A stretch of DNA of 64,000 nt from the IMG/VR virus record IMGVR_UViG_3300042308_001511, positions 62,001 through 126,000 of that record. The stretch is one strand, 5' to 3'. The notes beneath the pieces were generated by a model, which was not told where the DNA came from, ran no database searches, and saw only the letters and a program-made list of their open reading frames with translations. Each line of letters starts with the position of its first letter. Position 1 is the first letter of the stretch. The translations under genes were made by a program, and so were the position numbers. Below are positions 9,285-58,384 of the stretch, piece after piece.

Positions 9285-9315
9285 AAAAAAACCACCGGAA
9301 TGGGTGGTTTTTTTT
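9284..9315. terminator. bidirectional intrinsic terminator
   Basis: A8-CCACC-ggaatg-GGTGG-T8 between convergent genes. Confidence 0.85.
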
Positions 9316-10048
9316 ATTTTAACATTTCTCTAAATACTTCTTCGTTTATGTTGTATCTGTTTAGAAAATCATCATCAAATACCATATCACCTGGTATTTT
9401 ATAGAATTTTTTCAATTTATTAATAATATCATCGTATGGATATTCATTCCAGAAAATTATTATATTATCATCATTTGTGAATGTGAATAATTCGGTATCA
9501 CTTGTAAGTGATTTGAAGACCATACTACTCCATATAGATGCTTTATTTGAGTTGAATGAGGATATATAATCGAAATCCTTTATTATTTTCTTATATATTT
9601 TTACACCTAGGCCACAATTTCTTAAGAATGGTGGTAGAGAGTTGTTCACATCTATTTTATTTAGACGTTTTTCATCTAATGAAATATTTAGAAATATCTC
9701 CCTTATATTATAGTCTGAACCAAATAAATCAAATTCTAATTTTTTATTTCTATTTCCTACAACTTCTCTTTTGAGATCGGTGATCATAATATATAAATCA
9801 TTGTCGTATAATATGTCTATATCATCTATTGATTTTTCATCATAGTTTATATTATCATAATGTATGTTTGGTGCAACATTTTTAATATCATCTATCATTG
9901 TACTAAATTCGGATAATAGGGACTTATAATCACCGGCATCACGAAAACGTTTTATGGTATTTCTCTTTTCTTCTGATAATGATTTCTCATTCAATCTGAG
10001 TTTTTTTAGATCGTTAAGTTGATCAGAATATGTTCTTATTAATCTCAT
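9314..10048 (-). CDS. putative GNAT-fold protein, possibly virion-associated
   Basis: LPPFLRNCGLGVKIY resembles the acetyl-CoA-binding RxxGxG motif; very AT-rich; start MRLIRTY. Confidence 0.45.
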   Translation of the reverse strand: MRLIRTYSDQLNDLKKLRLNEKSLSEEKRNTIKRFRDAGDYKSLLSEFSTMIDDIKNVAPNIHYDNINYDEKSIDDIDILYDNDLYIMITDLKREVVGNRNKKLEFDLFGSDYNIREIFLNISLDEKRLNKIDVNNSLPPFLRNCGLGVKIYKKIIKDFDYISSFNSNKASIWSSMVFKSLTSDTELFTFTNDDNIIIFWNEYPYDDIINKLKKFYKIPGDMVFDDDFLNRYNINEEVFREMLK

Positions 10049-10068
10049 TTTATAAATATTTTTATAAT

Positions 10069-10095
10069 AAAAAACCACCTATTCGGGTGGTTTTT
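10069..10095. terminator. intrinsic terminator after uvsX
   Basis: AAAAAACCACC-tattcg-GGTGGTTTTT. Confidence 0.8.
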
Positions 10096-10100
10096 ATTTT

Positions 10101-11327
10101 CTATCCGAAGAAGTCTGCTGCGTCTCCGTCTACGTATCCATCGTTGTTGTCTTCATCATCAGAACCTACAATCTGTTCAAATTCTTTCTCTACTTGCTCA
10201 ATCTCATCGAGTGATTTGAATCTGAAATAATCATTGATAATAGGTGCCATTGAATTTAATACATCTTCTGTGAAAATTTCTGGTGTAAATAATTGTTTGG
10301 TTGTAACTGATTTACCTAAGTGTCTAATATACCATCTCAAGCCACCAGGTGTAAATGTCATCTCACCAGTTTTCTTATCAACTTCCATCTTACCTTTTGC
10401 GATACCGACTTCTTCGAAGAATTCTGGGCGACAGAATCCATCTAAACCAGTGTATGGGTTCATACCATTTACAAAAGAAATATCGAATCTTATTTTCTTT
10501 GGTTTTGCCATACGGTTTTTTGCTGTTTTGAATAAAACGGTAATACCAGATTGTCCTAAATCCATATCATCTTCATTTCCATCTTTAAGTTTCGATTTTG
10601 ACATGAATCCAATTACTGACGCAGAATAAAGTAATCCATTTCCTCCACGTAATTTTTCTTGTGGGTAGAGATCTAAAGTTAGATATGTGTGGTTTGCTAC
10701 AAGTAAAGGAATGTCGAGGTATCCTAAATCTGTGTTTATAGAACGGAACATAGATCCGAGAGCCTTTGCTTTGGTCATATCCTGTTTGATGTCACCTTTC
10801 AATAAATCCTCTTTCTCTTTGTTTGATGCCATCTGTCCTAATGAATCTAAAACTAACATAATTTTAGGTATTTCGTATCCTGCTAACTTCTGTTGTTTGA
10901 GTTCATCAACTAATTGAGTGAGTGTGATATTAACGTCCTCTACTTTGTTCGATCTTATTAGTCTTAGTTTTTCAAGTGAATTATCAACACCAAATTTAGG
11001 AAAGTCTTCAAGGTCAATTGCCTGTTCTGTGTCGATGTAGATGACGAAGTAACCTAACTTCTGTGCCTGCTTAACACATGAGTAACAGAGGAAAGATTTA
11101 CCTGATCCAGATTCACCAGCAAATGCAGTTATACGGTTTGTTGCGATACCACCACCTAATAACTTTCCTGATAGTGCCGCATCGAGGAGGTAAACACCTG
11201 TTGATATGAATGTCTTTTCTTTAATCTCTTTCTCTACAACGATTGGAACTGATTTAGCGATATTATCTAATATTCCTCCTATTTTACTAATCTCAAATTT
11301 TTTTATTTCTTTTGCTTGTTTTGCCAT
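10101..11327 (-). CDS. uvsX: RecA-like recombinase (UvsX type)
   Basis: ISTG, AGESGSGKS Walker A, YIDTE, LVLDS Walker B, VANHTY, GG...YSAS, KNR; acidic tail. Confidence 0.93.
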   Translation of the reverse strand: MAKQAKEIKKFEISKIGGILDNIAKSVPIVVEKEIKEKTFISTGVYLLDAALSGKLLGGGIATNRITAFAGESGSGKSFLCYSCVKQAQKLGYFVIYIDTEQAIDLEDFPKFGVDNSLEKLRLIRSNKVEDVNITLTQLVDELKQQKLAGYEIPKIMLVLDSLGQMASNKEKEDLLKGDIKQDMTKAKALGSMFRSINTDLGYLDIPLLVANHTYLTLDLYPQEKLRGGNGLLYSASVIGFMSKSKLKDGNEDDMDLGQSGITVLFKTAKNRMAKPKKIRFDISFVNGMNPYTGLDGFCRPEFFEEVGIAKGKMEVDKKTGEMTFTPGGLRWYIRHLGKSVTTKQLFTPEIFTEDVLNSMAPIINDYFRFKSLDEIEQVEKEFEQIVGSDDEDNNDGYVDGDAADFFG

Positions 11328-11407
11328 AATAAAATGAACTTTTTTTTTGTATTAATTATACAGTTCGGTAATGGCTTTGTTGATTTAAATAGTTGTGAAT
11401 GTGGTTG

Positions 11408-11935
11408 TTATTTGAGATTGAACTTAGCACCGACCCACGACCAGTTATCTGTGTCTTTCAGGTCTTCGGTGATTTCTGTTTGTGTCGTTTCACCTCTCTC
11501 TGTACCGATAAGGCATTCGAGTTCGATGTTGTCACATTGGTACTTAAGGTACTCCTCAATGCCCTCCATTATAGGCCACAACTCTTTCAGGTCTATACCA
11601 TCGTAATCTTCTGATGTGTCTAATATGATTGCTATGTTCCACTTACTCGCAATTCCTACTAGTGATCTTCTTCCGTCTATCTGTGCAGAGTATGTCTCGT
11701 ACTTAAATCTGTCACCGTTTGGATCAATGTCTTGTAACTGTACCCTTACGAACTCGTCGAGTTCTTCGAGTTGTTCCTGTATCTGTTTCTCCTTCGTCAC
11801 ACGCCAATCTCTGAGTGCGTCGGCCCTCTCGTCTTTATTCGCCTTGTCACTATGTCTCATCTTGTAGGCAGCGTTGGCCAAGGTCTCTGGACTTAGTTCT
11901 TCGTTGAACTTCTGATATCCTTTAAGTTTTCTCAT
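11408..11935 (-). CDS. putative head-internal virion protein
   Basis: Starts MRKLKGYQKFNEE. Confidence 0.6.
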   Translation of the reverse strand: MRKLKGYQKFNEELSPETLANAAYKMRHSDKANKDERADALRDWRVTKEKQIQEQLEELDEFVRVQLQDIDPNGDRFKYETYSAQIDGRRSLVGIASKWNIAIILDTSEDYDGIDLKELWPIMEGIEEYLKYQCDNIELECLIGTERGETTQTEITEDLKDTDNWSWVGAKFNLK

Positions 11936-11936
11936 C

Positions 11937-12383
11937 TTAGTAGTTTCTTTTGTCGTCGCCTCCACCCATATTCGTCAGTCCTATACCGATTAACGTAGAT
12001 ATTATTCCTACTATTACGAATAGTGGTTGGTTGTTAAATCCACCGTATATCATTGATCCCAATCCTCCTAATAATGTGGTTAATATTGATCCAAGTCCCA
12101 GGAAGGCACCTATTTTATCAAGACGTGAACTTTCGTTGATGATGGACTCGCCGATCATCTTCTCTGCCGTCTCAGGGTTCTCTGCCAGTTTGTCGAGTTT
12201 ACTCTTTGCACTTTCAAGCCTTGCTCTTTGTTCTGTTGTTAGCTTCTCTATTTTGTGTGCCACCTCGTCGATTATCTCAGGATTCTCGGATATGTATTCT
12301 TTGGCCATCTCCTGTCCTTTTCTGAAGTTCTCTTTAGCCTTATTGAAGTAGAAGAACTCGTTTATGCTCTTTACGTGTTTCAT
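11937..12383 (-). CDS. putative virion protein with two C-terminal hydrophobic segments
   Basis: Starts MKHVKSINEFF; internal IINES; Gly-rich hydrophobic helices. Confidence 0.65.
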   Translation of the reverse strand: MKHVKSINEFFYFNKAKENFRKGQEMAKEYISENPEIIDEVAHKIEKLTTEQRARLESAKSKLDKLAENPETAEKMIGESIINESSRLDKIGAFLGLGSILTTLLGGLGSMIYGGFNNQPLFVIVGIISTLIGIGLTNMGGGDDKRNY

Positions 12384-12390
12384 CTTATTT

Positions 12391-13257
12391 TTAATTTTTT
12401 TCGTTTATGGACATTATTACCTTTATCGTCAACTTGTTTCCTAGCACACTACTTATTGTACAAGACTCAGTCATCTCTAGCTTGACTTCTGGATACTCGT
12501 CCTGTGTTCGCTGGCATGCTATGTATATCTCCTCTACGAAGTCAGTCCTTTTTTTGAAGTCCTCGTATAAATTCTCGGGTTTTGTGTACGTGACTGATCT
12601 CATACCGTCGTTCACCCACTCGCCGGTTTTTATAGTGAAATTGTAAATGACGGACTTCTTGTAAATAGTTGGTCGGTAATCTCTCGTTACATCGAAACGA
12701 TCTTCTATCTCTGCATCGGACATAAGGTCAGCAAAGGCCATCTCCTGTGGTAGGTAGTCACCATTGGTGAAGTTGGTGAACTTCTCGTCAAATTTCTTTA
12801 TTCTCATAACGTATATATTATTTTGTTTTGATATACTTTCGAATGTCATTATTCTTTCCATAGTGACTCTCGGTTCGACAAAGACGAAGTCCTGTGTACC
12901 TGATTGTACAATTTCCAGTTTGGCACCTGGTTGATTCGGATCTTCCATACAGTACATCAGAGGTCCCCAAGGTCCTTTCACCTTTCCAATCTCGTTACAT
13001 ATCTGCATAAACTCATGCACTATTGGTTCGATACCTTCCAGTTCACCCCAGTTTATTCCAACCATTACCAGTCCATCGCCTTTGTTGTATTGGAACTTCC
13101 TGAGTAGGAACGGTATTACGTTGTATTCCAGGTTGAATCCTTCCAGTTCTCTTTCGAGTGACTCTTGTGTTGCGTTATCCCAGTCTATTAAGGAAACTAT
13201 GGCACCTGTATCTCGTAGTTCCTGTGCTCTTTCGTCTATTTCTTCGATTATGCTCAT
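12391..13257 (-). CDS. putative virion protein(s); probable internal start at 12807
   Basis: In-frame TAATATATA-N4-ATG giving MRIKKFDEKF. Confidence 0.6.
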   Translation of the reverse strand: MSIIEEIDERAQELRDTGAIVSLIDWDNATQESLERELEGFNLEYNVIPFLLRKFQYNKGDGLVMVGINWGELEGIEPIVHEFMQICNEIGKVKGPWGPLMYCMEDPNQPGAKLEIVQSGTQDFVFVEPRVTMERIMTFESISKQNNIYVMRIKKFDEKFTNFTNGDYLPQEMAFADLMSDAEIEDRFDVTRDYRPTIYKKSVIYNFTIKTGEWVNDGMRSVTYTKPENLYEDFKKRTDFVEEIYIACQRTQDEYPEVKLEMTESCTISSVLGNKLTIKVIMSINEKN

Positions 13258-14276
13258 TTCTTACACCATTTTATTGTTATTTCCAGGAAGCCGTCAGGAT
13301 AATTCTTTTGTGCATATTCGAGTACTGCGTAGACGTCATCGCCACTTCTTCCACTTATATTTTCCTGGAACCAGAACTCATTGAACGGATCTGAAAGTAT
13401 AGACAACAGGTTTGACTTACATCTCATCACGTTTATAGAGATCCAGTTACCTTCGTCTTCGAGGGTACGACATGTGTCGATTATCCTTTCTAAAAGGTCG
13501 TTCTCGGAGTGTAGTGTCCAACTAAGATGGTTTACGTCCATTGTCGTCTCGTGTCTGGTGAACGGATTAGTTGGTCTGATTGATATGGCATTTACGTTGT
13601 TATCCAAATTTTTGTCCCAGTGTGATTTTAACTGTTTAACTTCTACTTCTCCTTTGAATTCGTCGAACAATGAAGTGATGTCATTATCATGACTATTGCT
13701 CTCGTTGACGTGCTCCTTCCCGTGCTCCTCGATGAAGTCGTTTATTATGTCCACTATTACCATAGACATGTTCGGCACGTCGTATATGTCTTTGTTGCAG
13801 TCTGCCAGGTTGTTGTCCTCCATATCGTAGACGCTGCCGCTTTCGGATGAGTAGTAGACTATGTCGGTAGCGAAGTTCGATGTGTCTGATGTGAGTTCTA
13901 GTAGGTATCTTTCCATGCTGGTCTCGTTACGGAACTGGTATTCCAATGTCTGTTCGACCGATTCCAGGTCCCAGTTTCCGCTGTCCCATCTGTTTAGTAC
14001 GTATATCTCCTCTGCGGTGCTCTTCCCGGTCACTCCCTTTTTGGTGCCCTTCGGCTTTCTCTGTATAATCACGACGTGCTTGCCCTTGTGATAGTCCTCC
14101 CACTCGTGGATGTCGTCGTTTATGCACCACTGGCATTTGTTTGCGTACTTCCTGAGTGCGGTGTGTGTCAGTGGCATAACGACTATTATGTCATCGTTCC
14201 TGAACACGTCGAGTCTTTCCGACCTCTTCACACGTCCCTCGTTGAGAATCTCACCGTATTTCTTCAGGTATCTCAT
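13254..14276 (-). CDS. putative head-internal virion protein
   Basis: Starts MRYLKKYGEILNEG; internal VNES. Confidence 0.65.
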   Translation of the reverse strand: MRYLKKYGEILNEGRVKRSERLDVFRNDDIIVVMPLTHTALRKYANKCQWCINDDIHEWEDYHKGKHVVIIQRKPKGTKKGVTGKSTAEEIYVLNRWDSGNWDLESVEQTLEYQFRNETSMERYLLELTSDTSNFATDIVYYSSESGSVYDMEDNNLADCNKDIYDVPNMSMVIVDIINDFIEEHGKEHVNESNSHDNDITSLFDEFKGEVEVKQLKSHWDKNLDNNVNAISIRPTNPFTRHETTMDVNHLSWTLHSENDLLERIIDTCRTLEDEGNWISINVMRCKSNLLSILSDPFNEFWFQENISGRSGDDVYAVLEYAQKNYPDGFLEITIKWCKK

Positions 14277-15043
14277 TCTCTCGTCACGAATTTTATGACA
14301 ATCTGCCTGTCTCCTCCTCCTATACTAAGTTTCAGTCCTTCTTCCCAGGCCTCGTCTCTTATTTCTTTCAGTGCCTTCACGTATGCTGCCTGTTGAGGGG
14401 AGCTTACCTCTTCGTGTGTCCCATCTGCAATCTTACTGAGTCTTATTTTAGTACCCCATTCCATATCACTCTGAGATGGCGAGTATCTGAACTCTAACCA
14501 GTTGTCCTTTAATACCGGTCTTTTCTTTTGGTATCCTGCTATGAGGTCCGCCATCCTTTTGAGCCATCCATTGACCTTCGGCATCTTGTCCTCTTTCTTC
14601 TCGATGTCCGGTCCCACAACCACAAACATTAACACGAGTACACCATTATCGTTCTCTATGTTGAAGTTGACGTTGTTGTCGTTCCTGGCGATGTAGAACC
14701 TCTGTACGATTTCTATCGCTTCCTGTAACTTGTCTAGGTCGGTCATACACGTACCAGTGTTGAATGTTAACTGCGACTCGACTTCGTCTATTCCGGTCTC
14801 GTTTGACATGTCGAACTTAAGCTCTACGAGTTTCGCGACAGCGGTTCTGTTAGTACCGAAATTTACACCCTTCTTTATGACTAATCTACCTTCTTTGTAC
14901 ATTCCGTTGTACTCAACGTGACAGTCTGTTATCTTTAGTGTATCGTCGTCTTGGTCGGTGTACTCTGAAAAAAGAAGTCTTATGTCATTCTCGACGTTGT
15001 CCCAATTTTCGGTGGCGGCTTCGTTAAATCTTCTTATCCTCAT
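14273..15043 (-). CDS. putative head-internal virion protein
   Basis: Starts MRIRRFNEA. Confidence 0.65.
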   Translation of the reverse strand: MRIRRFNEAATENWDNVENDIRLLFSEYTDQDDDTLKITDCHVEYNGMYKEGRLVIKKGVNFGTNRTAVAKLVELKFDMSNETGIDEVESQLTFNTGTCMTDLDKLQEAIEIVQRFYIARNDNNVNFNIENDNGVLVLMFVVVGPDIEKKEDKMPKVNGWLKRMADLIAGYQKKRPVLKDNWLEFRYSPSQSDMEWGTKIRLSKIADGTHEEVSSPQQAAYVKALKEIRDEAWEEGLKLSIGGGDRQIVIKFVTRE

Positions 15044-15677: not shown

Positions 15678-15744
15678 GTAGTATATATAAAAATATCATG
15701 TATTTTTCCTATATTTGTTTTATATTTGTTAAAAAAATAAAAAC

Positions 15745-16026
15745 ATGAAAAAGATTCTGGATTTCGGTAAGTTTGTGGAGATAAACAATTCCAGACTCGA
15801 TGTTATAAAAACAGAGAAGTCGGACGACGAAGTTCGATACGATGTAAGACTTCGTATTAACGAACAAGTTGTAAAGGGCCAGATATTCGTAGATGGACAG
15901 GGTGAACTTGAGTGTTGGCAACTCTATGACTCAGAGGGTAGATGTCTTTCAGAGACATATGGACAAGATAATATAGATAAATTAGTAAATAAAAAAATTA
16001 AAAAGATTAGGAAGAATGAGGCATGA
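15745..16026 (+). CDS. hypothetical protein
   Basis: Starts MKKILDFGKFVE; two TATATTTG boxes upstream. Confidence 0.6.
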   Translation: MKKILDFGKFVEINNSRLDVIKTEKSDDEVRYDVRLRINEQVVKGQIFVDGQGELECWQLYDSEGRCLSETYGQDNIDKLVNKKIKKIRKNEA

Positions 16027-18588: not shown

Positions 18589-18906
18589 TTATTTAGTTTT
18601 TTCAATTAAATCATCATTAGCTTCTTTTGGTGAATTATATTCAATAACATAATTCTTAAGTTTTTTATCTGGTATATAATATAAAATAGTTAATTTCTTT
18701 TTGAAATTACCAACAGGGAATATGGCTATTTCATCATCAGAATTATTTTTGTAATTATGTCTATCATAATTTTCATCATACCCAGTATATTCATACCCGG
18801 CAGCTGTTAAAGTTTTATCTAACTTATCTAATTCCGCTGGTAATTTTGATTTTTTATCTGGTGTTTCATCTGGAGTATACTCTTCAAATAACTTTATGTA
18901 TTTCAT
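18589..18906 (-). CDS. putative head-internal virion protein
   Basis: Starts MKYIKLFEEY; TTTTATATATA upstream. Confidence 0.7.
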   Translation of the reverse strand: MKYIKLFEEYTPDETPDKKSKLPAELDKLDKTLTAAGYEYTGYDENYDRHNYKNNSDDEIAIFPVGNFKKKLTILYYIPDKKLKNYVIEYNSPKEANDDLIEKTK

Positions 18907-19423: not shown

Positions 19424-19930
19424 ATGATGAAATTCAAATCATTTACTGAGGCCAGGTTATCCGATGTACTTAATATAAAGGGTAATGGTGAGATTTCGGA
19501 TAATATTCGGAAAATGAAGGATAAACAATTTGAGTTCAATAGTAAATTGGTTAGTCTTATAACTCTTAAAAAGAGAGTGGGTGGTAAAAAGATTCAATTG
19601 AAAGTTGAATGGAATGATTCTGCAACACATGATCTGATACAAAGGGTCAGTAATCGTACATCATTTACTTCAATTGAAGAGTTTAACAATTTCTTCAAAG
19701 ATTTTGTAAATCGTATATTTCCTGATAAAGTTGGTAAAGAATTGTTTAGTGGTAAATACGCTTTTTATAGTGTTGAGTATAACATAACAATCATAATGGA
19801 GTTCAACATAGATAGATACCAAAAGGGTGATTACGCGATCCGTGTAGTTACACTTCTTCCGGGAAGAATTGCAAAAAATATTGTGGACTTTATCGATATC
19901 AATGAAAGTTTTGCTATATTTGATGTATGA
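19424..19930 (+). CDS. putative head-internal virion protein
   Basis: TAATATATA-N4-ATG; starts MMKFKSFTEA. Confidence 0.65.
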   Translation: MMKFKSFTEARLSDVLNIKGNGEISDNIRKMKDKQFEFNSKLVSLITLKKRVGGKKIQLKVEWNDSATHDLIQRVSNRTSFTSIEEFNNFFKDFVNRIFPDKVGKELFSGKYAFYSVEYNITIIMEFNIDRYQKGDYAIRVVTLLPGRIAKNIVDFIDINESFAIFDV

Positions 19931-22110: not shown

Positions 22111-22142
22111 AAAAAAAGAGGCATTTAGCCTCTTTTTTTTTT
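22111..22142. terminator. intrinsic terminator
   Basis: A7-GAGGC-attta-GCCTC-T run. Confidence 0.8.
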
Positions 22143-22704
22143 AGTCTCTATCGTAATTTTCTGGGAGTGGTTGATCTTCGTTTTTCAAAACGTGTTCTAC
22201 CACCTGATCAATCAATATGTCATACACGGACTCGTTTCCATTTCCGGTCATAATTATGTTTCTTACTGCATCGACTGTACGTCTAGCCTCAGGTACGTTT
22301 TCTTCGATTATGTCTAAGAACTTTGCGTAGAACTCGCTAACCTCTGCGTCATCCTCGATTTTACCCTCACCCCAGCACTCAGGACATTCCTCGTATCCAG
22401 CGTCTTCCTCGTCGTCGTAAGATTGTGCTTCGACTTCACCACTACCACTACAATGACTACAATGGTCATAGTTATCTGACTTTGCGTTGAAGTTTCCGTT
22501 GTTAAAATTCTCGTGGTACAACCTTGATACTGCACGAATAAGTTCACCGTTAAGTGTCTCGGATGATCCACTATCACCCACTAACTCTGCGTAGAGTTTG
22601 TCGTATTCCTCTTGATGTTTTCCTACACCATTCCAATATAGGTGTTTGCTTTCTACCGACTCATTAGTTAGTTTGAAGTCGTTGAATTTCTTAAGTTTAC
22701 TCAT
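22141..22704 (-). CDS. putative virion protein with DnaJ-type zinc finger
   Basis: Starts MSKLKKFNDFKLTNES; CSHCSGSG and CPECWGEG. Confidence 0.65.
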   Translation of the reverse strand: MSKLKKFNDFKLTNESVESKHLYWNGVGKHQEEYDKLYAELVGDSGSSETLNGELIRAVSRLYHENFNNGNFNAKSDNYDHCSHCSGSGEVEAQSYDDEEDAGYEECPECWGEGKIEDDAEVSEFYAKFLDIIEENVPEARRTVDAVRNIIMTGNGNESVYDILIDQVVEHVLKNEDQPLPENYDRD

Positions 22705-42259: not shown

Positions 42260-42553
42260 TTATTTGTTTTGTTTATTATCTTCTCCTTTGAATGGACCTA
42301 ACATACCTTTCAGATTCCAAGATGATACGAATTTTTTGTTATGTTTCTCATAATCTTCATATGATTCGATGCCTGTATCGATTGGGTTTTGAATATATTG
42401 TATGTTAGCACCCTGCTTATTCATATCAGAAATTCTATTTCCAATATCGGTTTTTGCCGATTGTTTCATAACCCTTTTTAGTTTTTCTACTGAATTTTGA
42501 CGTGGTAGTGCCTCGTTCAACATATCAAACTCTTCAAATTTTAATATTCTCAT
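42260..42553 (-). CDS. putative head-internal virion protein
   Basis: TAATATATA-N4-ATG; starts MRILKFEEFDMLNEA. Confidence 0.7.
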   Translation of the reverse strand: MRILKFEEFDMLNEALPRQNSVEKLKRVMKQSAKTDIGNRISDMNKQGANIQYIQNPIDTGIESYEDYEKHNKKFVSSWNLKGMLGPFKGEDNKQNK

Positions 42554-50560: not shown

Positions 50561-51205
50561 ATGAAACATTTAGACACATTTCAACTTTTTAATGAGAAAA
50601 TGGTGCTTGATAATTATGATGAGTATGCCAAATTAGTAGCGGATGCCTACGAAGCAGCACCAGAATATGATGAAACAATGATATCATCATATAAATCTCT
50701 TATAAATCACGCAGTTAATAAACTATATCCACAAATAATTGGTATGGGTATTGATATACAATTTGTTGACTATGATCCATATAGTAGTAGAAATGATATG
50801 GCAGAAGATGTTGAAAAGAATAAGCTACTAAGAATAAGTTCATTATTCAACGAACATCCTGGTATTGATAAAAAGATATTTACCAAAGAAGATAATTTGA
50901 AATTTAGAGCTGTACACGATTGGTATACACATATAATATGTAATCAAGATTTTGGTCTAAAAGGAGAACTAAAGGCATATAATACACACGCCACATTGGC
51001 ACCACCCGATGCACTTCCTGCACTATTTACCGAAGTAGTCGGACAAGCTTGTTATGCAATTGATAGAGGTAGTGTTGGTGAAAATGGTGATTTTATACCT
51101 GGATTCGGTGGGCAAAAGTTTGCCAGATTGAATGGATTTGATTATGGAAATGTTGGTATTGTTTCTGGATATGATATTTCGGGTAAAAAACTTTTCAAAA
51201 AATAA
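50561..51205 (+). CDS. putative head-internal virion protein with HDxxxH motif
   Basis: TAATATATA-N4-ATG; starts MKHLDTFQLFNE; FRAVHDWYTH...GE..AY..H...TEVVGQ. Confidence 0.65.
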   Translation: MKHLDTFQLFNEKMVLDNYDEYAKLVADAYEAAPEYDETMISSYKSLINHAVNKLYPQIIGMGIDIQFVDYDPYSSRNDMAEDVEKNKLLRISSLFNEHPGIDKKIFTKEDNLKFRAVHDWYTHIICNQDFGLKGELKAYNTHATLAPPDALPALFTEVVGQACYAIDRGSVGENGDFIPGFGGQKFARLNGFDYGNVGIVSGYDISGKKLFKK

Positions 51206-53547: not shown

Positions 53548-54156
53548 ATGAGATTCGAAGATTTTAATACAAATCCAAACTGGGATGAATCCATACTTAT
53601 GAATTATAGATGTTTCTATGATGAAATATGGAATGGTGGTGAATATGAGAGATATGATGTAGGTATAATGCCTGGTGATGTCGTTGTGGATTGTGGTGCT
53701 AGTATCGGTATATTTACCAGATATGCTCTTAGTAGAGGAGCCAGTCGTGTTATTTCTATAGAAGCTGATACTGATGTACATAAATATTTAGTAATAAATA
53801 CAGAAGGTCAAAATGTACTTTCGTTAAATGGAACGGTTGGTGGAGATTGGGATATTGAATCTATTATGAATACGGCGGGAATAGAAAATATTGATTTTTT
53901 GAAAATTGATATAGAGGGTTGGGAGTTTGACCTTCTTTCTAAAATAAGTGAAGACACACTTTCCAAAGTACGTAAAATATCGATGGAGGTTCACTTATGG
54001 GGAGTTTTTGAATACATATCAGAAGTACAGACTGCTGCAAATTCGTGTTTAAGACTCACTTCATTATTAGAAAGACTTACGAAGGCCGGATTCCGAATTT
54101 CTTTTGAAAGAGCACACACGAACACGTGTCTCTATATGTTATACGCAAAGCGTTAG
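53548..54156 (+). CDS. FkbM-family methyltransferase
   Basis: VVDCGASIG, FLKIDIEGWE, MEVH. Confidence 0.85.
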   Translation: MRFEDFNTNPNWDESILMNYRCFYDEIWNGGEYERYDVGIMPGDVVVDCGASIGIFTRYALSRGASRVISIEADTDVHKYLVINTEGQNVLSLNGTVGGDWDIESIMNTAGIENIDFLKIDIEGWEFDLLSKISEDTLSKVRKISMEVHLWGVFEYISEVQTAANSCLRLTSLLERLTKAGFRISFERAHTNTCLYMLYAKR

Positions 54157-56096
54157 ATACGAAAGTCGTTGAATCCTGAGATCCAGGACTCGTTCTTCTT
54201 CTTTCCCTTCTTCTTTCCCTTCTTCTTCACTGGCTCCTCTCTCTTCTCGTAAGGATTGACCTCACCATCAGGGCCCAAAGATTCTTCAGTCACATCTACT
54301 ATATTCTCGTCGAACGCACTAGCTATGCCTTCCGCCTTCTCTGTGTCAATAGTACCGACGTATGCCGTCGATCCGGAATAATAAGAAGATGGTGCCGACA
54401 CGTATACCGGAATTTCCGTTTGATCGAAATACTCGTAGTCGAATATTTTCTGTAATAACCCACTCTCACTATCCTCATGTATAAAGAGTAACATGTGTAC
54501 GTCATCTAACTTGCTTACGTAAGCCCTATCATCTTCGTTTTGATCTTCTACTCCGAAGAAGAAAGTCTCGTCTAATTCGACGTTCCACTTCTTCATACTT
54601 TCAAGCTTGTTCCTGAAGAAGTAAGTACCTGCTATCTCCTTCAGGAAAGGAATGACCTCCGGTCTACGATTTATAATCTCGAAAATAACTTTTTGATTAG
54701 GATCCTCGTGCATGTACTTTCTGATTTCCCAGTAGAACACAAGTGCTGACTTACCAAGTTTGTTCTTCTCTGCCGCAACGACCGACCAGAATAGTTCCTC
54801 GTCGAGTTGCTGTTCGGACATAACACACTGCATATAAGTCGCCCTGATACCAGGATATTCCCTCACTTTAGATATGTATTTACCTGCCGCTTTCAGTACC
54901 TTTTCATAACCTTCTTTTCCCCGAAGCGTGTCAAGAATATTCTCTATGTGTTTTACCTGATCTTCGAATTCTTCTTCCAGACCTTCCTTTCGGATTAACC
55001 TCTCTATACCTGCAACCGTTTCTACCTTTCCAACCAACTGGTTAGGATCCATCCTGTAATACGTTTCATCAGAATCCGCATATAACACAGGGTTCAGTGT
55101 GAACCTTCCATATTTGGCACCGTTCACCTCGTCTAACCAAGCATCTACCGTCGATTTGAAAACAGAAACCTTCTTACCGTACATTTCCGTATCGGAAACT
55201 AGCACGAAGTCGTCTTTGTCAACCTCTTTGTCATCCTCTACCTCTCTTATGTAAGGCTTTATGTTCAGAACCGAAACAGGGTTCTTTATATCTAAGTCGT
55301 CTTTCCTCACCAGGTAAGAAACCAAAGATCCTTCCTTCACATCATAAAGTAAATATTTTGCATTCACACCGGTCTCTGTTCTATCATCAATATCACTTTC
55401 GAGTGATCTTATTCTATCATTTATATTAGTTTCCTTTTCCTGTAACTCACTGAGTTTTTTTTCCTTATCAATGTTAGGAACAAATCTATTAATCTTATCC
55501 TTACTTAGTTTTATTTCGTCTATCTCTTGTTCTAAGGTCTGCCATTCTTGTTTGACTTTTCTTAGTTCTCTTCTGAGTTTTTCTACCTCGTCCTGTTTTT
55601 TGGTTACTCTCTCAGAAGTACCGTGTGCCATAGTCATACAGTTCGTCCAGTCTCTATCGGTATCAGCACCTGCGATATCATATGGGTGTCTTGATATTAC
55701 AACCATTAGTTGTTCTTTCGATCCAGCTTTCCTGTTTTCATCCTCTACAAAGGATTTCATAAGTCTTTTTGCTTCGTTGTCTTTGGCACCTAATTTGGTG
55801 AGCACCTGACCAATCTTAGATGTATTTTTGGCATCTTTGAATTTACAAATACCTTTCACATAATCAATAACCTCGTAACCTGCATTGATTAAATAATCGG
55901 TTACTTCTTTCTCAGTACCGGTATTATTAACGAGTGTTTCACCCTTCAATGGTAGATAAATTCGATAATGGTTCTTATCACCATTATATTTTTTGAATAT
56001 TTCTACATACCTTTCTTTATTGAAAGCTTGTACAAATCTACGGAATTGTGAAGGTTTGAGTGCCTCTGTAAAAGTTTTGAAATTTATTATTTTCAT
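54153..56096 (-). CDS. large putative head-internal virion protein
   Basis: TATATA-N5-ATG; starts MKIINFKTFTEA; central coiled coil; ends KKNESWISGFNDFRI. Confidence 0.7.
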   Translation of the reverse strand: MKIINFKTFTEALKPSQFRRFVQAFNKERYVEIFKKYNGDKNHYRIYLPLKGETLVNNTGTEKEVTDYLINAGYEVIDYVKGICKFKDAKNTSKIGQVLTKLGAKDNEAKRLMKSFVEDENRKAGSKEQLMVVISRHPYDIAGADTDRDWTNCMTMAHGTSERVTKKQDEVEKLRRELRKVKQEWQTLEQEIDEIKLSKDKINRFVPNIDKEKKLSELQEKETNINDRIRSLESDIDDRTETGVNAKYLLYDVKEGSLVSYLVRKDDLDIKNPVSVLNIKPYIREVEDDKEVDKDDFVLVSDTEMYGKKVSVFKSTVDAWLDEVNGAKYGRFTLNPVLYADSDETYYRMDPNQLVGKVETVAGIERLIRKEGLEEEFEDQVKHIENILDTLRGKEGYEKVLKAAGKYISKVREYPGIRATYMQCVMSEQQLDEELFWSVVAAEKNKLGKSALVFYWEIRKYMHEDPNQKVIFEIINRRPEVIPFLKEIAGTYFFRNKLESMKKWNVELDETFFFGVEDQNEDDRAYVSKLDDVHMLLFIHEDSESGLLQKIFDYEYFDQTEIPVYVSAPSSYYSGSTAYVGTIDTEKAEGIASAFDENIVDVTEESLGPDGEVNPYEKREEPVKKKGKKKGKKKNESWISGFNDFRI

Positions 56097-56180: not shown

Positions 56181-56672
56181 TTGATGAAAATAAAGATTTA
56201 CCCCGAAGACATAGTACGTAGGTGCTTATGGGACAACTACGTTTACTACATACTCGCTGGTTCCGATAAGGAAGCAGAGAAGATTCTTGCAGAGAATCAA
56301 GAGATGGATATTACAGAAAAGGATGCACTTGTAATTGGACTTTTGAAGGTTATAGAGACTGACAATCTAATACACAAGTTCAACGGATATGTAGTAGAGT
56401 TTCTAACCAATAAATCTATTAAACACACAGATTTACTTTTGGCAAGAAAGAAGACATTTGATACTGCTGTTGATAAATTCCTTGATAAATTTCCAGATTA
56501 TTGGGAGCCAAAGTCTACATATGTGGGTTCTTTGGCGGAATTGGTAGAGTACGTAAACTCAATGAAGACTGATTTAGAATCATTAGAGGTTCATAAAGTA
56601 GTTGATAAAAATGTCACTTATGAATTCTACAATAGTGCTGCAATACGAAAATTATTAAAATTCAATTATTAA
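56181..56672 (+). CDS. hypothetical protein
   Basis: AAAC-N18-TATAAT upstream; heads the grpE-dnaJ operon. Confidence 0.7.
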   Translation: MMKIKIYPEDIVRRCLWDNYVYYILAGSDKEAEKILAENQEMDITEKDALVIGLLKVIETDNLIHKFNGYVVEFLTNKSIKHTDLLLARKKTFDTAVDKFLDKFPDYWEPKSTYVGSLAELVEYVNSMKTDLESLEVHKVVDKNVTYEFYNSAAIRKLLKFNY

Positions 56673-56677
56673 TAAAA

Positions 56678-57217
56678 ATGGAGGATAAAAATAAAATTAG
56701 TGAGGAACTAAAAACCAAAGAAATGAAAATAGATAGTAATACTATTGGACTTGATTTGACTGGTGAAAATGCAACAGAGTTTGTATTAGAAGACAATCCA
56801 ATTGTACATGTTTCTGTATTAGAAGAACAATTAAAAGAAGCAAATAATAAATATATGCTTCTTTATGCAGACTTAGAGAACTACAAAAAGAGAGTCACTA
56901 AGGAAAAAGAAGAAATTAAAAGTAATACAAAGGTTTCTATGTTATCTGCGATATTAGATATGGATAACGACATCGCGTTGGCAATTAAGAATATAAAAGA
57001 TGAAACTGCGAGAGATGGTGTTAGTCTAATTGCCGGAAAATTAGAGAACTTCTTAAAGTTACAAGGTATTGAGCCAATTCAAACTGAGACTTATGACGAA
57101 GATTTACATGAAGTAGTTACTGTTATTGGTGAAGGTAAGAACGTGATTGATGTTATATCAAAAGGATACACACTTTCTGGTAAACCATTCAGATATCCAA
57201 AAATAGTTATTGGGTAA
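56678..57217 (+). CDS. grpE: nucleotide exchange factor GrpE
   Basis: ADLENYKKR..KE, D...HE, KGYTL.G...R...VI. Confidence 0.92.
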   Translation: MEDKNKISEELKTKEMKIDSNTIGLDLTGENATEFVLEDNPIVHVSVLEEQLKEANNKYMLLYADLENYKKRVTKEKEEIKSNTKVSMLSAILDMDNDIALAIKNIKDETARDGVSLIAGKLENFLKLQGIEPIQTETYDEDLHEVVTVIGEGKNVIDVISKGYTLSGKPFRYPKIVIG

Positions 57218-57762
57218 TGAAACAGAGAGCCTACAACACTAGGTTCACTGAAGGATTGAACCATGCTTACTTCATAAATGGTCTTATAACCTCCTATACT
57301 GATAAAGTACAGGATGAAAGTATGCGTGAACAAATTAGTAGAGATCTCGAACATCTGATTGACGAAAGAAGAGAGTTGTTCAAAGAAGGTCCTTTATCCG
57401 GTTATATGCACGAAATTGACGAGGATTCCACTGAGGAGTTCCTCGTCAGATGTGTATATGAAGCTTGGGAAAGTATGGTACTAAATCCACCCGGTTTATT
57501 CCGTATAAACCCAGGTGATACTAGAAGAGAGATGTTATCACTTATGTGGGACGTTGATCACTTTTTAGACACTATTTCTGTGTGGGCAGCAGATGTAGAT
57601 GGTCTGTTAGACCGTTTCGAACACTTAGACAAAACATCTGATACGATGCGTTTAATAACGCAGAATTATGTTAATATGATGATTAAAAAGTGTCAGGGAC
57701 ACACTAAACAAGAGCAGGAAATTATACTAAGAGACTTAAGGATAGAAAAGACACTGAAATGA
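57217..57762 (+). CDS. hypothetical protein with C-terminal RDxRI motif
   Basis: Ends ILRDLRIEKTLK. Confidence 0.65.
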   Translation: MKQRAYNTRFTEGLNHAYFINGLITSYTDKVQDESMREQISRDLEHLIDERRELFKEGPLSGYMHEIDEDSTEEFLVRCVYEAWESMVLNPPGLFRINPGDTRREMLSLMWDVDHFLDTISVWAADVDGLLDRFEHLDKTSDTMRLITQNYVNMMIKKCQGHTKQEQEIILRDLRIEKTLK

Positions 57763-58088
57763 AACTTAGATGGCATTTAGAGATATCACCACACGTAGAT
57801 ACACTAAAATACAGAAAGACCGTTGAGGATTTAGTTGGTCCTATTATGGACTGGTTATGTGAAAGAGTGGTCGAAAATGACCTCACTACATTCGAAAAAG
57901 TAGAGGATCTTTTTAAACAAATAATGGATGAGCTTCCAATAATGCGATTGTTGCGTAGATCCGATTACAACGAACACTACGTCGGACCGGACTTCTTTAT
58001 ACAATACAACAAAAACACCGATATTATCTTTGAAGATAATGTGGCTTGTATACGAAGAGAACTTATAATAGACAACCTACTGAAATGA
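57759..58088 (+). CDS. hypothetical protein with C-terminal RExxIxxLL motif
   Basis: Ends IRRELIIDNLLK. Confidence 0.65.
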   Translation: MKLRWHLEISPHVDTLKYRKTVEDLVGPIMDWLCERVVENDLTTFEKVEDLFKQIMDELPIMRLLRRSDYNEHYVGPDFFIQYNKNTDIIFEDNVACIRRELIIDNLLK

Positions 58089-58384
58089 GAAAGATGAAAA
58101 GATACGATGACTTCAAAAGTCCAGAGAACGAAACTCCATACTTAACAAAGGAGGAGTTAGCTAATGTAAAGTGGACAAAATACGTTATTGTGGTTCCTAC
58201 CGAGGAAGACCGTGAAGAGTTGATGGATGCGTTTGAACACATACACCACTCTGACATAGATACAGACAACGTCGCAGTGAATCAATTAGCACACGAATAT
58301 CTTAACGAAGATAGACAACCAGGAACATACAACAACATAGTTGTGGATTCTGATGCATATGAAAAACTAAGAGTGAAGAGATGA
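58085..58384 (+). CDS. hypothetical protein
   Basis: Starts MRKMKRYDDF; ATGA overlap. Confidence 0.6.
   Translation: MRKMKRYDDFKSPENETPYLTKEELANVKWTKYVIVVPTEEDREELMDAFEHIHHSDIDTDNVAVNQLAHEYLNEDRQPGTYNNIVVDSDAYEKLRVKR

What the first reader, a model, noticed from the sequence alone, without database searches (positions are those of the whole stretch)
9314..58384. Shared N-terminal motif on about 12 unrelated proteins: candidate capsid-targeting/injection tag
Seen in sequence: otherwise unrelated proteins start MRKLKGYQKFNEE (11935), MKHVKSINEFF (12383), MRIKKFDEKF (12807), MRYLKKYGEILNEG (14276), MRIRRFNEA (15043), MKYIKLFEEY (18906), MMKFKSFTEA (19424), MSKLKKFNDFKLTNES (22704), MRILKFEEFDMLNEA (42553), MKHLDTFQLFNE (50561), MKIINFKTFTEA (56096) and MRKMKRYDDF (58085). 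Consensus is M-[KR]-x-[IL]-x-x-[FY]-x-[ED]-F, often followed by [LIF]-N-E. Most follow the TATATA box. Established: T4 internal proteins use a 10-aa capsid targeting sequence (MKTYQEFIAE) that gp21 cleaves after Glu. Inference: this phage uses a portable tag to package a varied set of proteins (membrane, zinc-finger, HDxxxH, possibly GNAT) into the head for delivery at infection.
Basis: partly seen in the sequence, partly recalled or inferred. Interest (0 to 1): 0.85.

Follow-up and report, generated by a model that had tools for sequence, protein, structure and literature searches.

The report
Shared leader tag on megaphage proteins
About one gene in eight of this giant Bacteroidota-type phage begins with the same short leader peptide, which resembles in sequence and placement the phage T4 signal that loads proteins into the virus head, so huge phages may inject a large, fast-changing set of proteins with their DNA.

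Summary
All 12 quoted N-termini are present. The core M-[KRS]-x-[ILVMF]-x-x-[FY] is about 10-fold enriched at N-termini over shuffles and internal-Met windows. It replicates in an independent 634-kb relative, LR745206.1: 98 of 920 genes against 0.6% of controls, logo MK[YH][LI][KR]x[FY].

Selection acts on the amino acids: synonymous codon use in the tag equals the genome background. The tagged bodies are mostly unrelated, and the tag is not part of the fold.

Two tagged window proteins have distant homologues with quite different leaders, which are lineage-specific and shared within each lineage. Nearly all end hydrophobic-x-Glu.

The lineage is T4-like (UvsX, gp32, RnlA in the window). Relatives have a gp20 portal, a gp23 capsid protein and a gp21-type protease fused to a repeat scaffold.

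- In 90 kb of T4, the only protein matching the core is internal protein I, which has the same MKT-aromatic-x-E-F start as the proven IPII/IPIII signal.
- Tags end in F/L/I-N/T-Glu plus a small residue, the same motif as the protease-scaffold junction and the capsid propeptide.
- Tagged genes favour the late promoter box used by virion genes.
- One tagged body is a domain of head-packaged polyvalent or MuF proteins.

A capsid-targeting, protease-removed leader is therefore the best reading (about 0.6), but packaging and cleavage are untested. The scale, about 100 proteins per genome, is unreported.

The parts
11408..11935 (-). Tagged gene, 175 aa, leader MRKLKGYQKFNE|E. Operon-internal, no promoter box of its own.
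   Evidence: Translation. Matrix score 9.5, above all 362 null windows. Same leader in L004-L006.
11937..12383 (-). Tagged gene, 148 aa, leader MKHVKSINE|F. One hydrophobic stretch near residue 91.
   Evidence: (score 9.6).
12391..12807 (-). Tagged gene, 138 aa, leader MRIKKFDEKF. Appears fused to the upstream gene in the window by a 1-nt deletion.
   Evidence: Separate 138-aa gene in L003. Deletion shown. Box at 12812-12818, 4 nt from the ATG. Score 6.0.
13254..14276 (-). Tagged gene, 340 aa, leader MRYLKKYGEILNE|G. The N-domain (VRVPR..PLTH family) is found elsewhere behind many other leaders.
   Evidence: (score 14.3). A natural deletion variant in L006 keeps exactly the 13-residue leader.
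14273..15043 (-). Tagged gene, 256 aa, leader MRIRRFNE|A.
   Evidence: score 7.4. AlphaFold residues 1-13 have pLDDT<50. The ortholog in LR745206 carries a different tag, MKYLKKFYED.
18589..18906 (-). Tagged gene, 105 aa, leader MKYIKLFEEY followed by a Pro/Asp/Thr-rich linker.
   Evidence: score 18.2, the best in the window. Box at 18930-18936.
19424..19930 (+). Tagged gene, 168 aa, leader MMKFKSFTE|A. This is the weakest match (register shifted).
   Evidence: score -1.2. Box at 19413-19419, 4 nt from the ATG.
22141..22704 (-). Tagged gene, 187 aa, leader MSKLKKFNDFKLTNE|S. The body has two CxxC motifs (zinc-finger-like).
   Evidence: weak DnaJ_CXXCXGXG hit; score 12.8. Box at 22727-22733.
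42260..42553 (-). Tagged gene, 97 aa, leader MRILKFEEFDMLNE|A.
   Evidence: score 3.9. The ortholog in LR745206 starts MNHLKKFNEN. Box at 42558-42564.
50561..51205 (+). Tagged gene, 214 aa, leader MKHLDTFQLFNE|K. The body is a domain with no solved-structure match (invariant R116, H119, D120, H124) that occurs inside MuF or polyvalent virion proteins.
   Evidence: searches (score 16.9; pLDDT 94 overall; residues 1-10 at 53), 78, 80, 68/71. Box at 50550-50556.
54153..56096 (-). Tagged gene, 647 aa, leader MKIINFKTFTE|A.
   Evidence: no family hit; score 5.5. Box at 56102-56108 lies inside the longer ORF, which supports the 56096 start.
58085..58384 (+). Tagged gene, 99 aa, leader MRKMKRYDDF. 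Start overlaps the upstream stop (ATGA).
   Evidence: score 10.1.
15745..16026 (+). It is preceded by a host-type TAnnTTTG promoter, so it is doubtful.
   Evidence: (score 6.5).
15682..15688 (-). ATATATA late-type box 4 nt before the first gene (15045-15677) of the operon. Three tagged genes lie between it and the next box at 12812-12818 (starts 15043, 14276, 12383); the tagged genes at 12807 and 11935 lie downstream of that second box.
   Evidence: The same box precedes the sheath, terminase, portal, capsid and gp25-like genes in LR745206.

Best explanation
The motif is a portable N-terminal leader of about 9-16 residues. It has a basic, aromatic, amphipathic start (M-K/R-x-L/I-K/R-x-F/Y) and ends in hydrophobic-N/T/F-Glu followed by a small residue.

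- The tagged proteins are made late, together with the head proteins.
- The leader docks them onto the scaffolding core of the prohead. In relatives that core is the long repeat-bearing C-terminal part of a gp21-type protease-scaffold fusion.
- The protease then cuts after the Glu.
- The mature proteins stay in the head and enter the host with the DNA.

Shown here:
- The tag is real and specific to N-termini.
- It is selected at the protein level.
- It is separable from the body and interchangeable between lineages.
- It is associated with the late-type promoter box.
- The lineage has T4-type head genes.

Inferred, not shown: docking to the scaffold, cleavage, presence in virions and injection.
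For: (1) Enrichment and replication.

(2) Position 3 is Y or H in 81 of 98 tags, although the regex did not ask for it.

(3) Synonymous codon use in the tag equals the genome background. One window tag uses G+C-rich codons: ATGAGATACCTGAAGAAATAC....

(4) The bodies are unrelated. In LR745206 the 98 tagged proteins fall into 94 BLAST components, and the window's 12 give no pairwise hits.

(5) AlphaFold leaves the tag outside the fold. In 50561-51205 residues 1-10 have pLDDT 53 against 94 overall. In 14273-15043 residues 1-13 are below 50.

(6) Leaders are swapped between lineages.
- The 50561-51205 body also occurs behind MKLLFEGWRRYLLSE, behind M..ILKxILKEAINE, and with no leader.
- The 13254-14276 N-domain also occurs behind MNLQETIRRILREELNE, MNLQEQISRIQSMMGIVSE, MK.LI.KILKE and others.
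- In the 98-kb contig L110, 10 genes in a 12-gene run share MKLLFENWR-type starts, among them SET and NUDIX proteins.

(7) The lineage is T4-like.
- The window encodes UvsX-like, gp32-like and RnlA-like proteins.
- LR745206 has gp17, 18, 19, 20, 23 and 25 homologues, with Pfam Gp23 at 1.8e-26 and Portal_T4 at 2.7e-57.
- A 707-aa ORF directly upstream of the capsid gene aligns with T4 gp21 through GELNHP/GEFDHP and VSSRGLG/VSSRAAG. These motifs are kept in 45 of 47 related loci.

(8) T4 comparison. ipII and ipIII start MKTYQEFIAE, and ipI starts MKTFKEF. ipI is the only regex hit among 137 T4 ORFs. The megaphage matrix ranks IPI 2nd and IPIII 5th of 140.

(9) The tag end looks like a processing site.
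- The first Glu after residue 7 is at position 8, 9 or 11.
- The residue after it is S, N, A or G in 66 of 92 tags.
- The third residue before the cut is hydrophobic in about 70%.
- The same motif is conserved as KVLNES at the protease-scaffold junction.
- It recurs in the scaffold: NES is seen 4 times against 0.21 expected, and hydrophobic-x-E-small 23 times against 3.5 expected.
- It is the last Glu (SINE|NAY) of the invariant capsid propeptide.

(10) Promoters. The late box is present upstream of 50/98 tagged against 177/822 untagged genes (p=3e-9). The host-type box is present upstream of 2/98 against 93/822. The late box precedes the sheath, terminase, portal and capsid genes, none of which carry the tag.

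(11) The body of 50561-51205 matches domains in 'Phage head morphogenesis domain', 'Large polyvalent protein associated' and 'ART-PolyVal' proteins, and in Rhodococcus phage E3 gp205, annotated 'structural protein'. In L111 its homologue lies in the same gene run as a ClpP-family protease gene (two genes downstream) and a gp25-like baseplate gene. Such proteins are regarded as packaged and injected (PMC5512222).

(12) In T4, the capsid targeting sequence is sufficient to load foreign proteins into the scaffolding core, and the internal proteins are a diverse set sharing only that sequence (PMC5694885, PMC3012670, PMC9958956).
Against: - There is no direct evidence of packaging, cleavage or injection.
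- The head module lies outside the window. It was seen only in relatives whose UvsX is 78% identical.
- The scale is far beyond any known cargo set: 12-13 of about 92 genes here and about 100 of 920 in LR745206. T4 has three internal proteins plus Alt.
- Tagged proteins are more acidic than the rest (median pI 4.9 against 5.6), unlike the T4 internal proteins, which I recall as largely basic.
- The resemblance to the T4 sequence is at the level of pattern only. The matrix scores of the T4 internal proteins are negative in absolute terms.
- The capsid propeptide is invariant along its whole length, so conservation of SINE|N says little on its own.
- About a fifth of the LR745206 tags belong to one diverged paralogous family.
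- Several window tags lack a clean N/T-Glu-small end (MRIKKFDEKF, MKYIKLFEEY, MRKMKRYDDF).
Confidence: 0.6

Rival explanations
1. The leader is a recognition signal for something other than the prohead. Candidates are a phage-encoded chaperone or unfoldase (the window encodes a ClpB/ClpA-like AAA+ protein and a DnaJ), a timed degron, or targeting to another phage-built compartment.
For: - A Clp-type ATPase lies at 31802-33922 and a DnaJ-like start at 58659.
- The tagged fraction (11-14% of genes) is very large for capsid cargo.
- The bodies are acidic.
- The leader is an exposed, low-confidence N-terminal helix, as degrons and chaperone tags are.
Against: This reading does not explain several observations:
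- The shared core with the T4 internal proteins.
- The recurrence of the tag-end motif in the protease-scaffold fusion and the capsid propeptide.
- The late promoter bias.
- The fact that one body is a domain of head-associated polyvalent proteins.

In addition, no link between Clp or DnaJ and tagged genes was found beyond their presence in the same genome.
Confidence: 0.2
2. The shared N-terminus is only the best-conserved remnant of one hugely expanded, fast-diverging paralogous family. It has no targeting role.
For: An HMM built on residues downstream of the tag unites about 27 LR745206 proteins that share a helix D-I-x-D-[IM]-F-x-E-L-x-D-x-G-[FY]. Twenty of them match the regex and most of the rest look tag-like. 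Tagged genes often lie in tandem clusters.
Against: - About three quarters of tagged proteins lie outside that family.
- Sizes range from 63 to 1284 aa.
- The window's 12 bodies share nothing detectable.
- Two bodies occur in other lineages behind unrelated leaders or with none.
- The tag is not part of the predicted fold.
Confidence: 0.1
3. The motif reflects an RNA- or DNA-level requirement rather than a protein signal. Candidates are initiation on leaderless or near-leaderless late transcripts, a translational operator, or a recombination cassette.
For: The ATATATA box ends only 4-5 nt before the ATG in six window genes. This implies very short or absent leaders, so downstream codons could matter. 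Lys codons at positions 2 and 5 are A-rich.
Against: - Synonymous codon choice in the tag equals the genome-wide choice for K, Y, H, L, I, F, E, N, R and S.
- One window tag is written in G+C-rich codons.
- Five window tags are operon-internal without a box.
- Late virion genes with the same box lack the tag.
- The motif tolerates register shifts and conservative replacements typical of peptides.
Confidence: 0.07
4. A chance pattern produced by an A+T-rich genome, whose N-termini are rich in K, N, I, F, Y and E.
For: Window G+C is 32-42% in 2-kb bins (29% in LR745206). M-K starts are common in the window's ORF calls.
Against: - Shuffling residues within each N-terminus removes the signal: 0 of 1000 shuffles reach the observed count.
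- Internal Met windows give 0.6%.
- T4, with the same G+C content, gives one hit in 137 ORFs, and that hit is internal protein I.
Confidence: 0.01

Closest known systems
Capsid targeting sequence (CTS) of the phage T4 internal proteins IPI, IPII and IPIII (Mullaney and Black 1996, as cited in PMC5694885, PMC3012670 and PMC9958956)
   Same: - A short leader of about 10-20 residues at the N-terminus, on otherwise unrelated and fast-evolving proteins.
- A core M-K-x-aromatic/aliphatic-x-x-F.
- An end in hydrophobic-x-Glu followed by a small residue.
- The phage has gp20, gp21 and gp23-type head genes.
- The genes have a late-type promoter.
   Different: - About 12 tagged genes in 64 kb and about 100 per genome, against three in T4.
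- Position 3 is Y or H, not T.
- The preferred residue before the Glu is Asn.
- The bodies are mostly acidic.
- The protease is fused to a scaffold bearing 5-12 fourteen-residue repeats.
- Packaging and cleavage are untested.
Propeptides of head and ejection proteins in phiKZ-like giant phages (phiKZ, 201phi2-1, SPN3US; PMC5694885, PMC10052503)
   Same: Giant phages with a gp21-like prohead protease that cuts after Glu. Many internal head proteins carry N-terminal propeptides thought to target them to the prohead. The paralogues gp53 and gp54 share an identical 15-residue N-terminus.
   Different: - Those propeptides are mostly 80-160 residues long and are not one shared short motif.
- About 50 head proteins are known by proteomics, of which only a minority are cleaved.
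- The hosts are Proteobacteria.
MuF (SPP1 gp7) fusions and polyvalent proteins of phages (PMC5512222)
   Same: They deliver diverse effector domains with the DNA by attaching them to something that is built into the head. The body of 50561-51205 is a domain found inside such proteins.
   Different: In those proteins, many domains are strung on one polypeptide anchored by a MuF or portal domain. Here each domain is a separate small protein with its own short leader.
Cargo-loading peptides of encapsulins and encapsulation peptides of bacterial microcompartments (my own knowledge, not tested here)
   Same: A short amphipathic helix plus linker, portable between unrelated cargo proteins, that binds the interior of a protein shell.
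   Different: Those peptides are not removed by a protease, are often C-terminal (in encapsulins), and belong to cellular compartments rather than virions.

Membership tests
T4-type capsid targeting sequence / internal protein system | A short leader at the extreme N-terminus, shared by proteins whose bodies are unrelated | tested here: met
T4-type capsid targeting sequence / internal protein system | The leader is separable from the body and transferable between bodies | tested here: met
   Natural leader swaps in two families. The L006 deletion variant keeps only the leader. The tag lies outside the predicted fold. Experimental transfer was not tested.
T4-type capsid targeting sequence / internal protein system | Sequence resemblance to MKT[YF][QK]EF... 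| tested here: inconclusive
   The core M-K-x-aromatic/aliphatic-x-x-F is shared. IPI is the only T4 hit of the regex. IPI ranks 2nd and IPIII 5th of 140 with the megaphage matrix, but their scores are negative. Homology cannot be told apart from convergence.
T4-type capsid targeting sequence / internal protein system | The leader ends at a prohead-protease site (hydrophobic-x-Glu, cut after Glu) | tested here: inconclusive
   The motif is present: the first Glu is at position 8, 9 or 11, the next residue is S/N/A/G in 72%, and the third residue before the cut is hydrophobic in about 70%. It is shared with the protease-scaffold junction, the scaffold and the capsid propeptide. Cleavage itself was not observed. 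In the window, 6 of 12 tags have a clean hydrophobic-[NT]-Glu-small end.
T4-type capsid targeting sequence / internal protein system | The phage encodes a gp21-type (Peptidase S77) prohead protease with a scaffolding core, plus gp20 and gp23-type portal and capsid proteins | tested here: inconclusive
   Met in relatives. In LR745206 the Pfam S77 hit is only 0.0051, but the catalytic His and Ser motifs align and the gene sits next to the capsid gene. The motifs are kept in 45 of 47 metagenome loci. This could not be tested for the window's own genome, because the head module is not in the 64 kb.
T4-type capsid targeting sequence / internal protein system | Late expression together with head genes | tested here: inconclusive
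   Promoter-motif association only. No expression data.
T4-type capsid targeting sequence / internal protein system | Physical presence of the processed proteins in virions and their entry into the host | not testable with these tools
   No cultured member of the clade was found in the phage collection, and no proteomics for the clade was found.
Polyvalent / MuF-linked injected effector domains | The body domain recurs inside large multidomain phage proteins that have a head-morphogenesis (MuF) or other polyvalent-associated domain | tested here: met
   True for 50561-51205 only. BFVD matches at E 4e-10 to 1e-6 to proteins of 619-1477 aa so named. Also phage E3 gp205, annotated 'structural protein'. 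The other 11 bodies were not tested.

The most novel reading that the evidence does not exclude
Huge Bacteroidota-type phages load on the order of a hundred different proteins (at least 10% of their coding capacity) into the head through a short leader that the protease removes. The virion would then deliver a whole, rapidly turning-over effector set rather than a handful of internal proteins.

Other uncultivated phage lineages would run the same system with their own leader 'zip codes' (MKLLFENWRxYLxE, MNLQEQISRIxSMMGxxxE, MNLQETIRRILREELNE and others). If so, injected proteins could be read directly from metagenomic sequence.
Probability: 0.4. Interest if true: 0.9.

Novelty: new variant of a known kind. 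Interest (0 to 1): 0.78.

Why it matters
How proteins are localised to the T4 scaffolding core is still called 'mysterious' (PMC9958956), and only a few natural capsid targeting sequences are known. If the reading here is right, several things follow.

- These megaphages supply hundreds of natural variants of such a leader, together with the matching repeat scaffold. That is a ready data set for working out the docking rule.
- Much of the unannotated coding capacity of huge phages would be explained. None of the 10 largest tagged proteins has a Pfam hit.
- A simple sequence rule would pick out candidate injected anti-defence or host-takeover proteins in uncultivated phages.
- The tagged set turns over fast: only 2 of the window's 12 have an ortholog in a relative whose core genes are about 78% identical. 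That is the behaviour expected of arms-race genes.

Tried and rejected
It matches no protein fully. It was replaced by the 7-residue core.
- **The x-[ED]-F extension.** It does not replicate in LR745206.
- **Family libraries.** Pfam and PHROGs on the tagged proteins gave almost nothing.
- **Function of the 50561-51205 body.** The PDB sequence search and the PDB fold search gave nothing.
- **Gene 37472-39364 (MSKLSKFIKLDK).** It looked tag-like, but its N-terminus is conserved along with the rest of the protein in its ortholog (E 5e-214), so it was rejected as a tag.
- **Gene 9314-10048 (MRLIRTYSDQ).** It matches the regex but scores poorly, so it is not counted.
- **Lak-A1.** It gave no hits, but ORF calling there is unreliable: only 65% of the stretch fell in called ORFs; Lak phages are reported to use an alternative genetic code (abstract listed).
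- **Second structure.** The AlphaFold model of 14273-15043 is of low confidence (pLDDT 68.6) and says little beyond the disordered tag.
- **Phage E3 proteome paper.** It is not in the library, so 'structural protein' rests on the GenBank annotation alone.
- **Literature.** Searches for capsid targeting sequence, megaphage, Mahaphage, Lak and the literal leader strings found no earlier description.
- **Failed call.** The first attempt at the metagenome scan failed for technical reasons and was repeated.

Full report
**What the window is**

The 64 kb come from a 344,083-bp metagenome contig, JGI 3300042308 Ga0453162_0000001. Genes lack Shine-Dalgarno sequences and have A-rich leaders. G+C in 2-kb bins is 32-42%.

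The only DNA match among 50,697 phage records is the 634,780-bp uncultured phage LR745206.1. The UvsX/RecA-like protein (10101-11327) is 78% identical to those of LR745206.1 and LR756502.1. It is more distantly related to other 460-735-kb uncultured phages, to the Lak phages of Prevotella and to T4-like cyanophages.

The window also encodes:
- a gp32-like single-strand-binding protein (40913-41896);
- an RnlA/gp63-like protein (49325-50569);
- a ClpB/ClpA-like ATPase (31802-33922);
- a DnaJ-like protein.

It is therefore a T4-related huge phage, probably of Bacteroidota. A 2025 paper describes similar aquatic 'moraphages' with Clp, DnaK/J and a 'prohead core protein protease'. It does not mention N-termini.

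**Checking the observation**

Every one of the 12 quoted N-termini is there.
- 10 of 92 N-termini match.
- 2 of 362 internal-Met windows match.
- Shuffled N-termini give 0.86 on average, and no shuffle of 1000 reaches the observed count.

- Whole LR745206.1 (fetched in 13 pieces): 98 of 920 ORF starts match (10.7%), against 0.57% of internal-Met windows and 8.6 expected from shuffles.
- The logo is M-K-[Y/H]-[L/I]-[K/R]-x-[F/Y]-[E/N/K]-.... Position 3, which the pattern left free, is Y or H in 81 of 98.
- With Asn-Glu required within 10 residues downstream, 36 match against 0.5 expected.
- A weight matrix trained only on LR745206.1 lifts 9 window N-termini above every one of 362 null windows, and ranks all 12 reader genes in the top 17.
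- In 80 further metagenome loci the rate is 41/565 against 19/3080.
- In 90 kb of phage T4, with the same G+C content, the pattern hits one protein in 137.

Chance and composition are excluded.

**Protein signal, not nucleic-acid signal**

Synonymous codon choice inside the tag is the same as in the rest of the genome for ten amino acids. The leader of 13254-14276 is written in G+C-rich codons. Five window tags sit inside operons with no promoter of their own. Late virion genes with the same promoter do not carry the tag.

**Unrelated bodies and a detachable leader**

With the first 14 residues removed, the 98 tagged LR745206 proteins fall into 94 BLAST components. The window's 12 give no pairwise phmmer hit at E<0.1.

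One caveat: an HMM finds a diverged family of about 27 LR745206 proteins that share a helix just after the tag. Part of the set is therefore paralogous.

AlphaFold gives the body of 50561-51205 a pLDDT of 94 but only 53 for residues 1-10. In 14273-15043, residues 1-13 are below 50.

A natural variant (L006) has lost 178 codons of 13254-14276 between two CAACGAG microhomologies. It keeps exactly the 13-residue leader joined to the C-terminal half.

**Leader swapping, the most telling result**

The body of 50561-51205 starts at Glu12-Lys-[LM]-x-L-x-N-Y-D-E-Y. It has 191 homologues.
- Close homologues carry megaphage-type tags.
- Distant homologues carry MKLLFENWRKFLNE, M..ILKxILKEAINE or other helices.
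- Some have no leader at all, for example MTFNEK... and MIPEK....

The N-domain of 13254-14276 (VRVPR..PLTH) likewise occurs behind MNLQETIRRILREELNE, MNLQEQISRIQSMMGIVSE, MK.LI.KILKE, MTKLNE or megaphage-type tags. Some of these leaders head longer multidomain proteins.

Within their own genomes these foreign leaders are again shared by neighbours.
- In the 98-kb contig L110, 10 genes in a 12-gene run start with MKLLFENWR-type leaders. They include a SET-domain protein, a NUDIX protein and the homologue of 50561-51205.
- L112 and L113 show three further leader classes.

Nearly all leaders end in hydrophobic-x-Glu. The tag is therefore portable, lineage-specific and functionally equivalent across lineages.

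**Why the prohead is the likely destination**

(a) Head genes. LR745206.1 has T4-type terminase, sheath, tube, portal, capsid and gp25 genes at 166-202 kb. The 707-aa ORF just upstream of the capsid gene aligns with T4 gp21 across the catalytic His and Ser motifs. It continues into about 12 tandem YSEYLAENLDKNI repeats and an acidic tail, so it is a protease-scaffold fusion. Forty-five of 47 distinct versions from other metagenomes keep the catalytic motifs, and they have 5-12 repeats.

(b) T4 internal proteins. From the T4 record, ipII and ipIII begin MKTYQEFIAE and ipI begins MKTFKEFTST...ITE|A. IPI is the single T4 hit of the core pattern. IPI and IPIII rank 2nd and 5th of 140 T4 ORFs with the megaphage matrix, although with negative scores.

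(c) Tag end. The first Glu after residue 7 falls at position 8, 9 or 11. It is followed by S, N, A or G in 72% of tags, and the third residue before the cut is hydrophobic in about 70%. The same motif appears elsewhere in the head proteins:
- as the conserved KVLNES at the protease-scaffold junction;
- in the scaffold, where NES occurs 4 times against 0.21 expected and hydrophobic-x-E-small 23 times against 3.5 expected;
- as the last Glu, SINE|NAY, of the capsid propeptide.

T4 gp21 is known to cut after Glu in L/I-x-E. This is established knowledge; see also PMC5694885.

(d) Promoters. An ATATATA box lies within 45 nt upstream of 51% of tagged against 22% of untagged genes (p=3e-9). The host-type TAnnTTTG element lies upstream of 2% against 11%. 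The ATATATA box precedes the sheath, terminase, portal, capsid and gp25-like genes, so it is most likely the late promoter.

(e) Body of 50561-51205. It has no PDB neighbour. It does match domains inside proteins named 'Phage head morphogenesis domain-containing' (1390 aa), 'Large polyvalent protein associated domain', 'ART-PolyVal-like' and 'NAT_SF'. It also matches Rhodococcus phage E3 gp205, an 858-aa 'structural protein' encoded next to a tail fibre gene. In L111 the homologue lies in the same gene run as a ClpP-family protease gene, two genes downstream, and a gp25-like baseplate gene. MuF-linked and polyvalent proteins are regarded as packaged and injected (PMC5512222).

(f) Literature. 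In T4 the capsid targeting sequence suffices to load foreign proteins into the core. [quoted passage not shown]

**What argues for caution**

- Nothing shows that the tagged proteins are in particles or are cut.
- The head genes are outside the window and were studied in relatives.
- About 100 tagged genes per genome is far beyond any known cargo list. By my own rough estimate (no tool result), a head for about 640 kb, scaled from the roughly 1000 internal-protein molecules of T4 (PMC5694885), could hold that many species at some tens of copies each.
- Tagged bodies are acidic (median pI 4.9 against 5.6).
- The likeness to the T4 sequence is one of pattern only.
- The capsid propeptide is invariant throughout, so its SINE|N is weak evidence.
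- Some window tags lack a clean Glu-small end.
- A role as a tag for the phage's Clp or DnaJ machinery, or for another compartment, is not excluded. I give it 0.2.

**Turnover**

Only 2 of the window's 12 tagged genes have an ortholog in LR745206.1. Both orthologs are tagged, but with different leader sequences. The ten largest tagged proteins of LR745206.1 have no Pfam hit at all. This is the behaviour of accessory, conflict-driven genes, like the T4 internal protein loci.

**Novelty**

Literature searches found no description of such leaders in huge phages. The searches covered capsid targeting sequence, jumbo phage, megaphage, Mahaphage, Lak and the literal leader strings. The mechanism proposed is the known T4 one. 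The lineage, the consensus, the scale and the existence of several lineage-specific leader classes are new.

**Verdict**

- Observation: confirmed.
- Interpretation: partly supported. The portable tag is shown; capsid targeting and cleavage are the best-supported but untested reading.
- Confidence: 0.6.
- Novelty: new variant of a known kind.
- Interest: 0.78.

Noticed in passing
window 12391-13257 (-), break near 12835: The 288-aa ORF is two genes joined by a 1-nt deletion in an A-run (GAAAAG to GAAAG), relative to L003 and L005. In relatives the upstream 146-150-aa gene stops 11 nt before the tagged gene. This is either a sequencing or assembly error or a real frameshift.
   Followed up: yes
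window, e.g. 12812-12818, 15682-15688, 19413-19419, 42558-42564, 50550-50556, 56102-56108 (4-5 nt from ATG); 18930-18936, 22727-22733 (22-23 nt): There are two promoter classes. An (A/T)ATATATA box (T4 late-promoter-like) ends either 4-5 nt or 22-23 nt before the ATG; the short spacing implies leaderless or nearly leaderless mRNAs. Other genes (15745, 51267, 2434-3069) have the Bacteroidota-type TAnnTTTG element. The same bimodal spacing is seen in LR745206.
   Followed up: partly
LR745206.1 198546-200669 (L023:8546-10669) and 47 related loci among L030-L109: The gp21-like prohead protease is fused to a scaffold that carries 5-12 tandem 14-residue repeats (YSEYLAENLDKNI) and an acidic tail. 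KVLNES is conserved at the junction. The repeats are an obvious candidate docking array for the leaders.
   Followed up: partly
L110:6027-18326: An unrelated 98-kb metagenome contig (38% G+C) has a 12-gene run (6027-18326) in which 10 genes begin MKLLFENWRxYLxE or a close variant (the last, 665 aa, only loosely: MQKFFDNWRDFIQE). The proteins are 87-665 aa and include SET-domain, NUDIX and DUF6321 proteins. This is a second, even more uniform leader system.
   Followed up: partly
L112 and L113 (28-30% G+C contigs of 53 and 120 kb): Further shared leader classes occur here: MNLQEQISRIxSMMGxxxE, MNLQQTIRRILREELNE / MKxxIKKILRE, and MKKxIRLTESDLxxxVKRVINE. There is also a tandem family that starts MKF[LE]I[TN]ENKLxKVIFKYLD.
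   Followed up: no
window 50561-51205 (+): The body folds with pLDDT 94 into a helix-rich domain with no PDB neighbour (best E 1.2). Invariant residues across 61 homologues are N112, R116, H119, D120, H124, E136, N141, E158, Q162 and K186, which suggests an enzyme. It is widespread as a module of polyvalent phage proteins.
   Followed up: partly
L006:1268-1756 versus window 13709-14237: A natural 178-codon deletion between two CAACGAG repeats (the leader's L-N-E and an internal V-N-E) removes the whole N-domain of the 340-aa protein and keeps the leader.
   Followed up: yes
L035:7801-8184, L044:4713-5096, L068:4151-4549 and others; LR745206.1 202508-202897: The small NFACT-R (PF05670) protein encoded immediately downstream of the capsid gene carries the leader. 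Its length varies among orthologs (MKYLKYFES|KK.., MRNLRTFKYFLKEG|KK.., MIKKYKLFKEG|KK..) while the body is conserved.
   Followed up: no
window 59934-63839 (-) and 26683-28218 (-): A 1301-aa ORF has DUF5122 beta-propeller repeats, two Laminin_G_3 domains and Lcl_C domains. A 511-aa protein has Laminin_G_3 and follows a late box. Both are probable fibre or adhesin proteins, and neither is tagged.
   Followed up: no
window 31802-33922 (+), 58659-59705 (+): The phage encodes a two-ring Clp/Hsp100-type ATPase (AAA_2, AAA_lid_9, ClpB_D2-small, UVR motif) and a DnaJ-like protein. The same chaperone set is described for aquatic 'moraphages' (PMC12619734).
   Followed up: no
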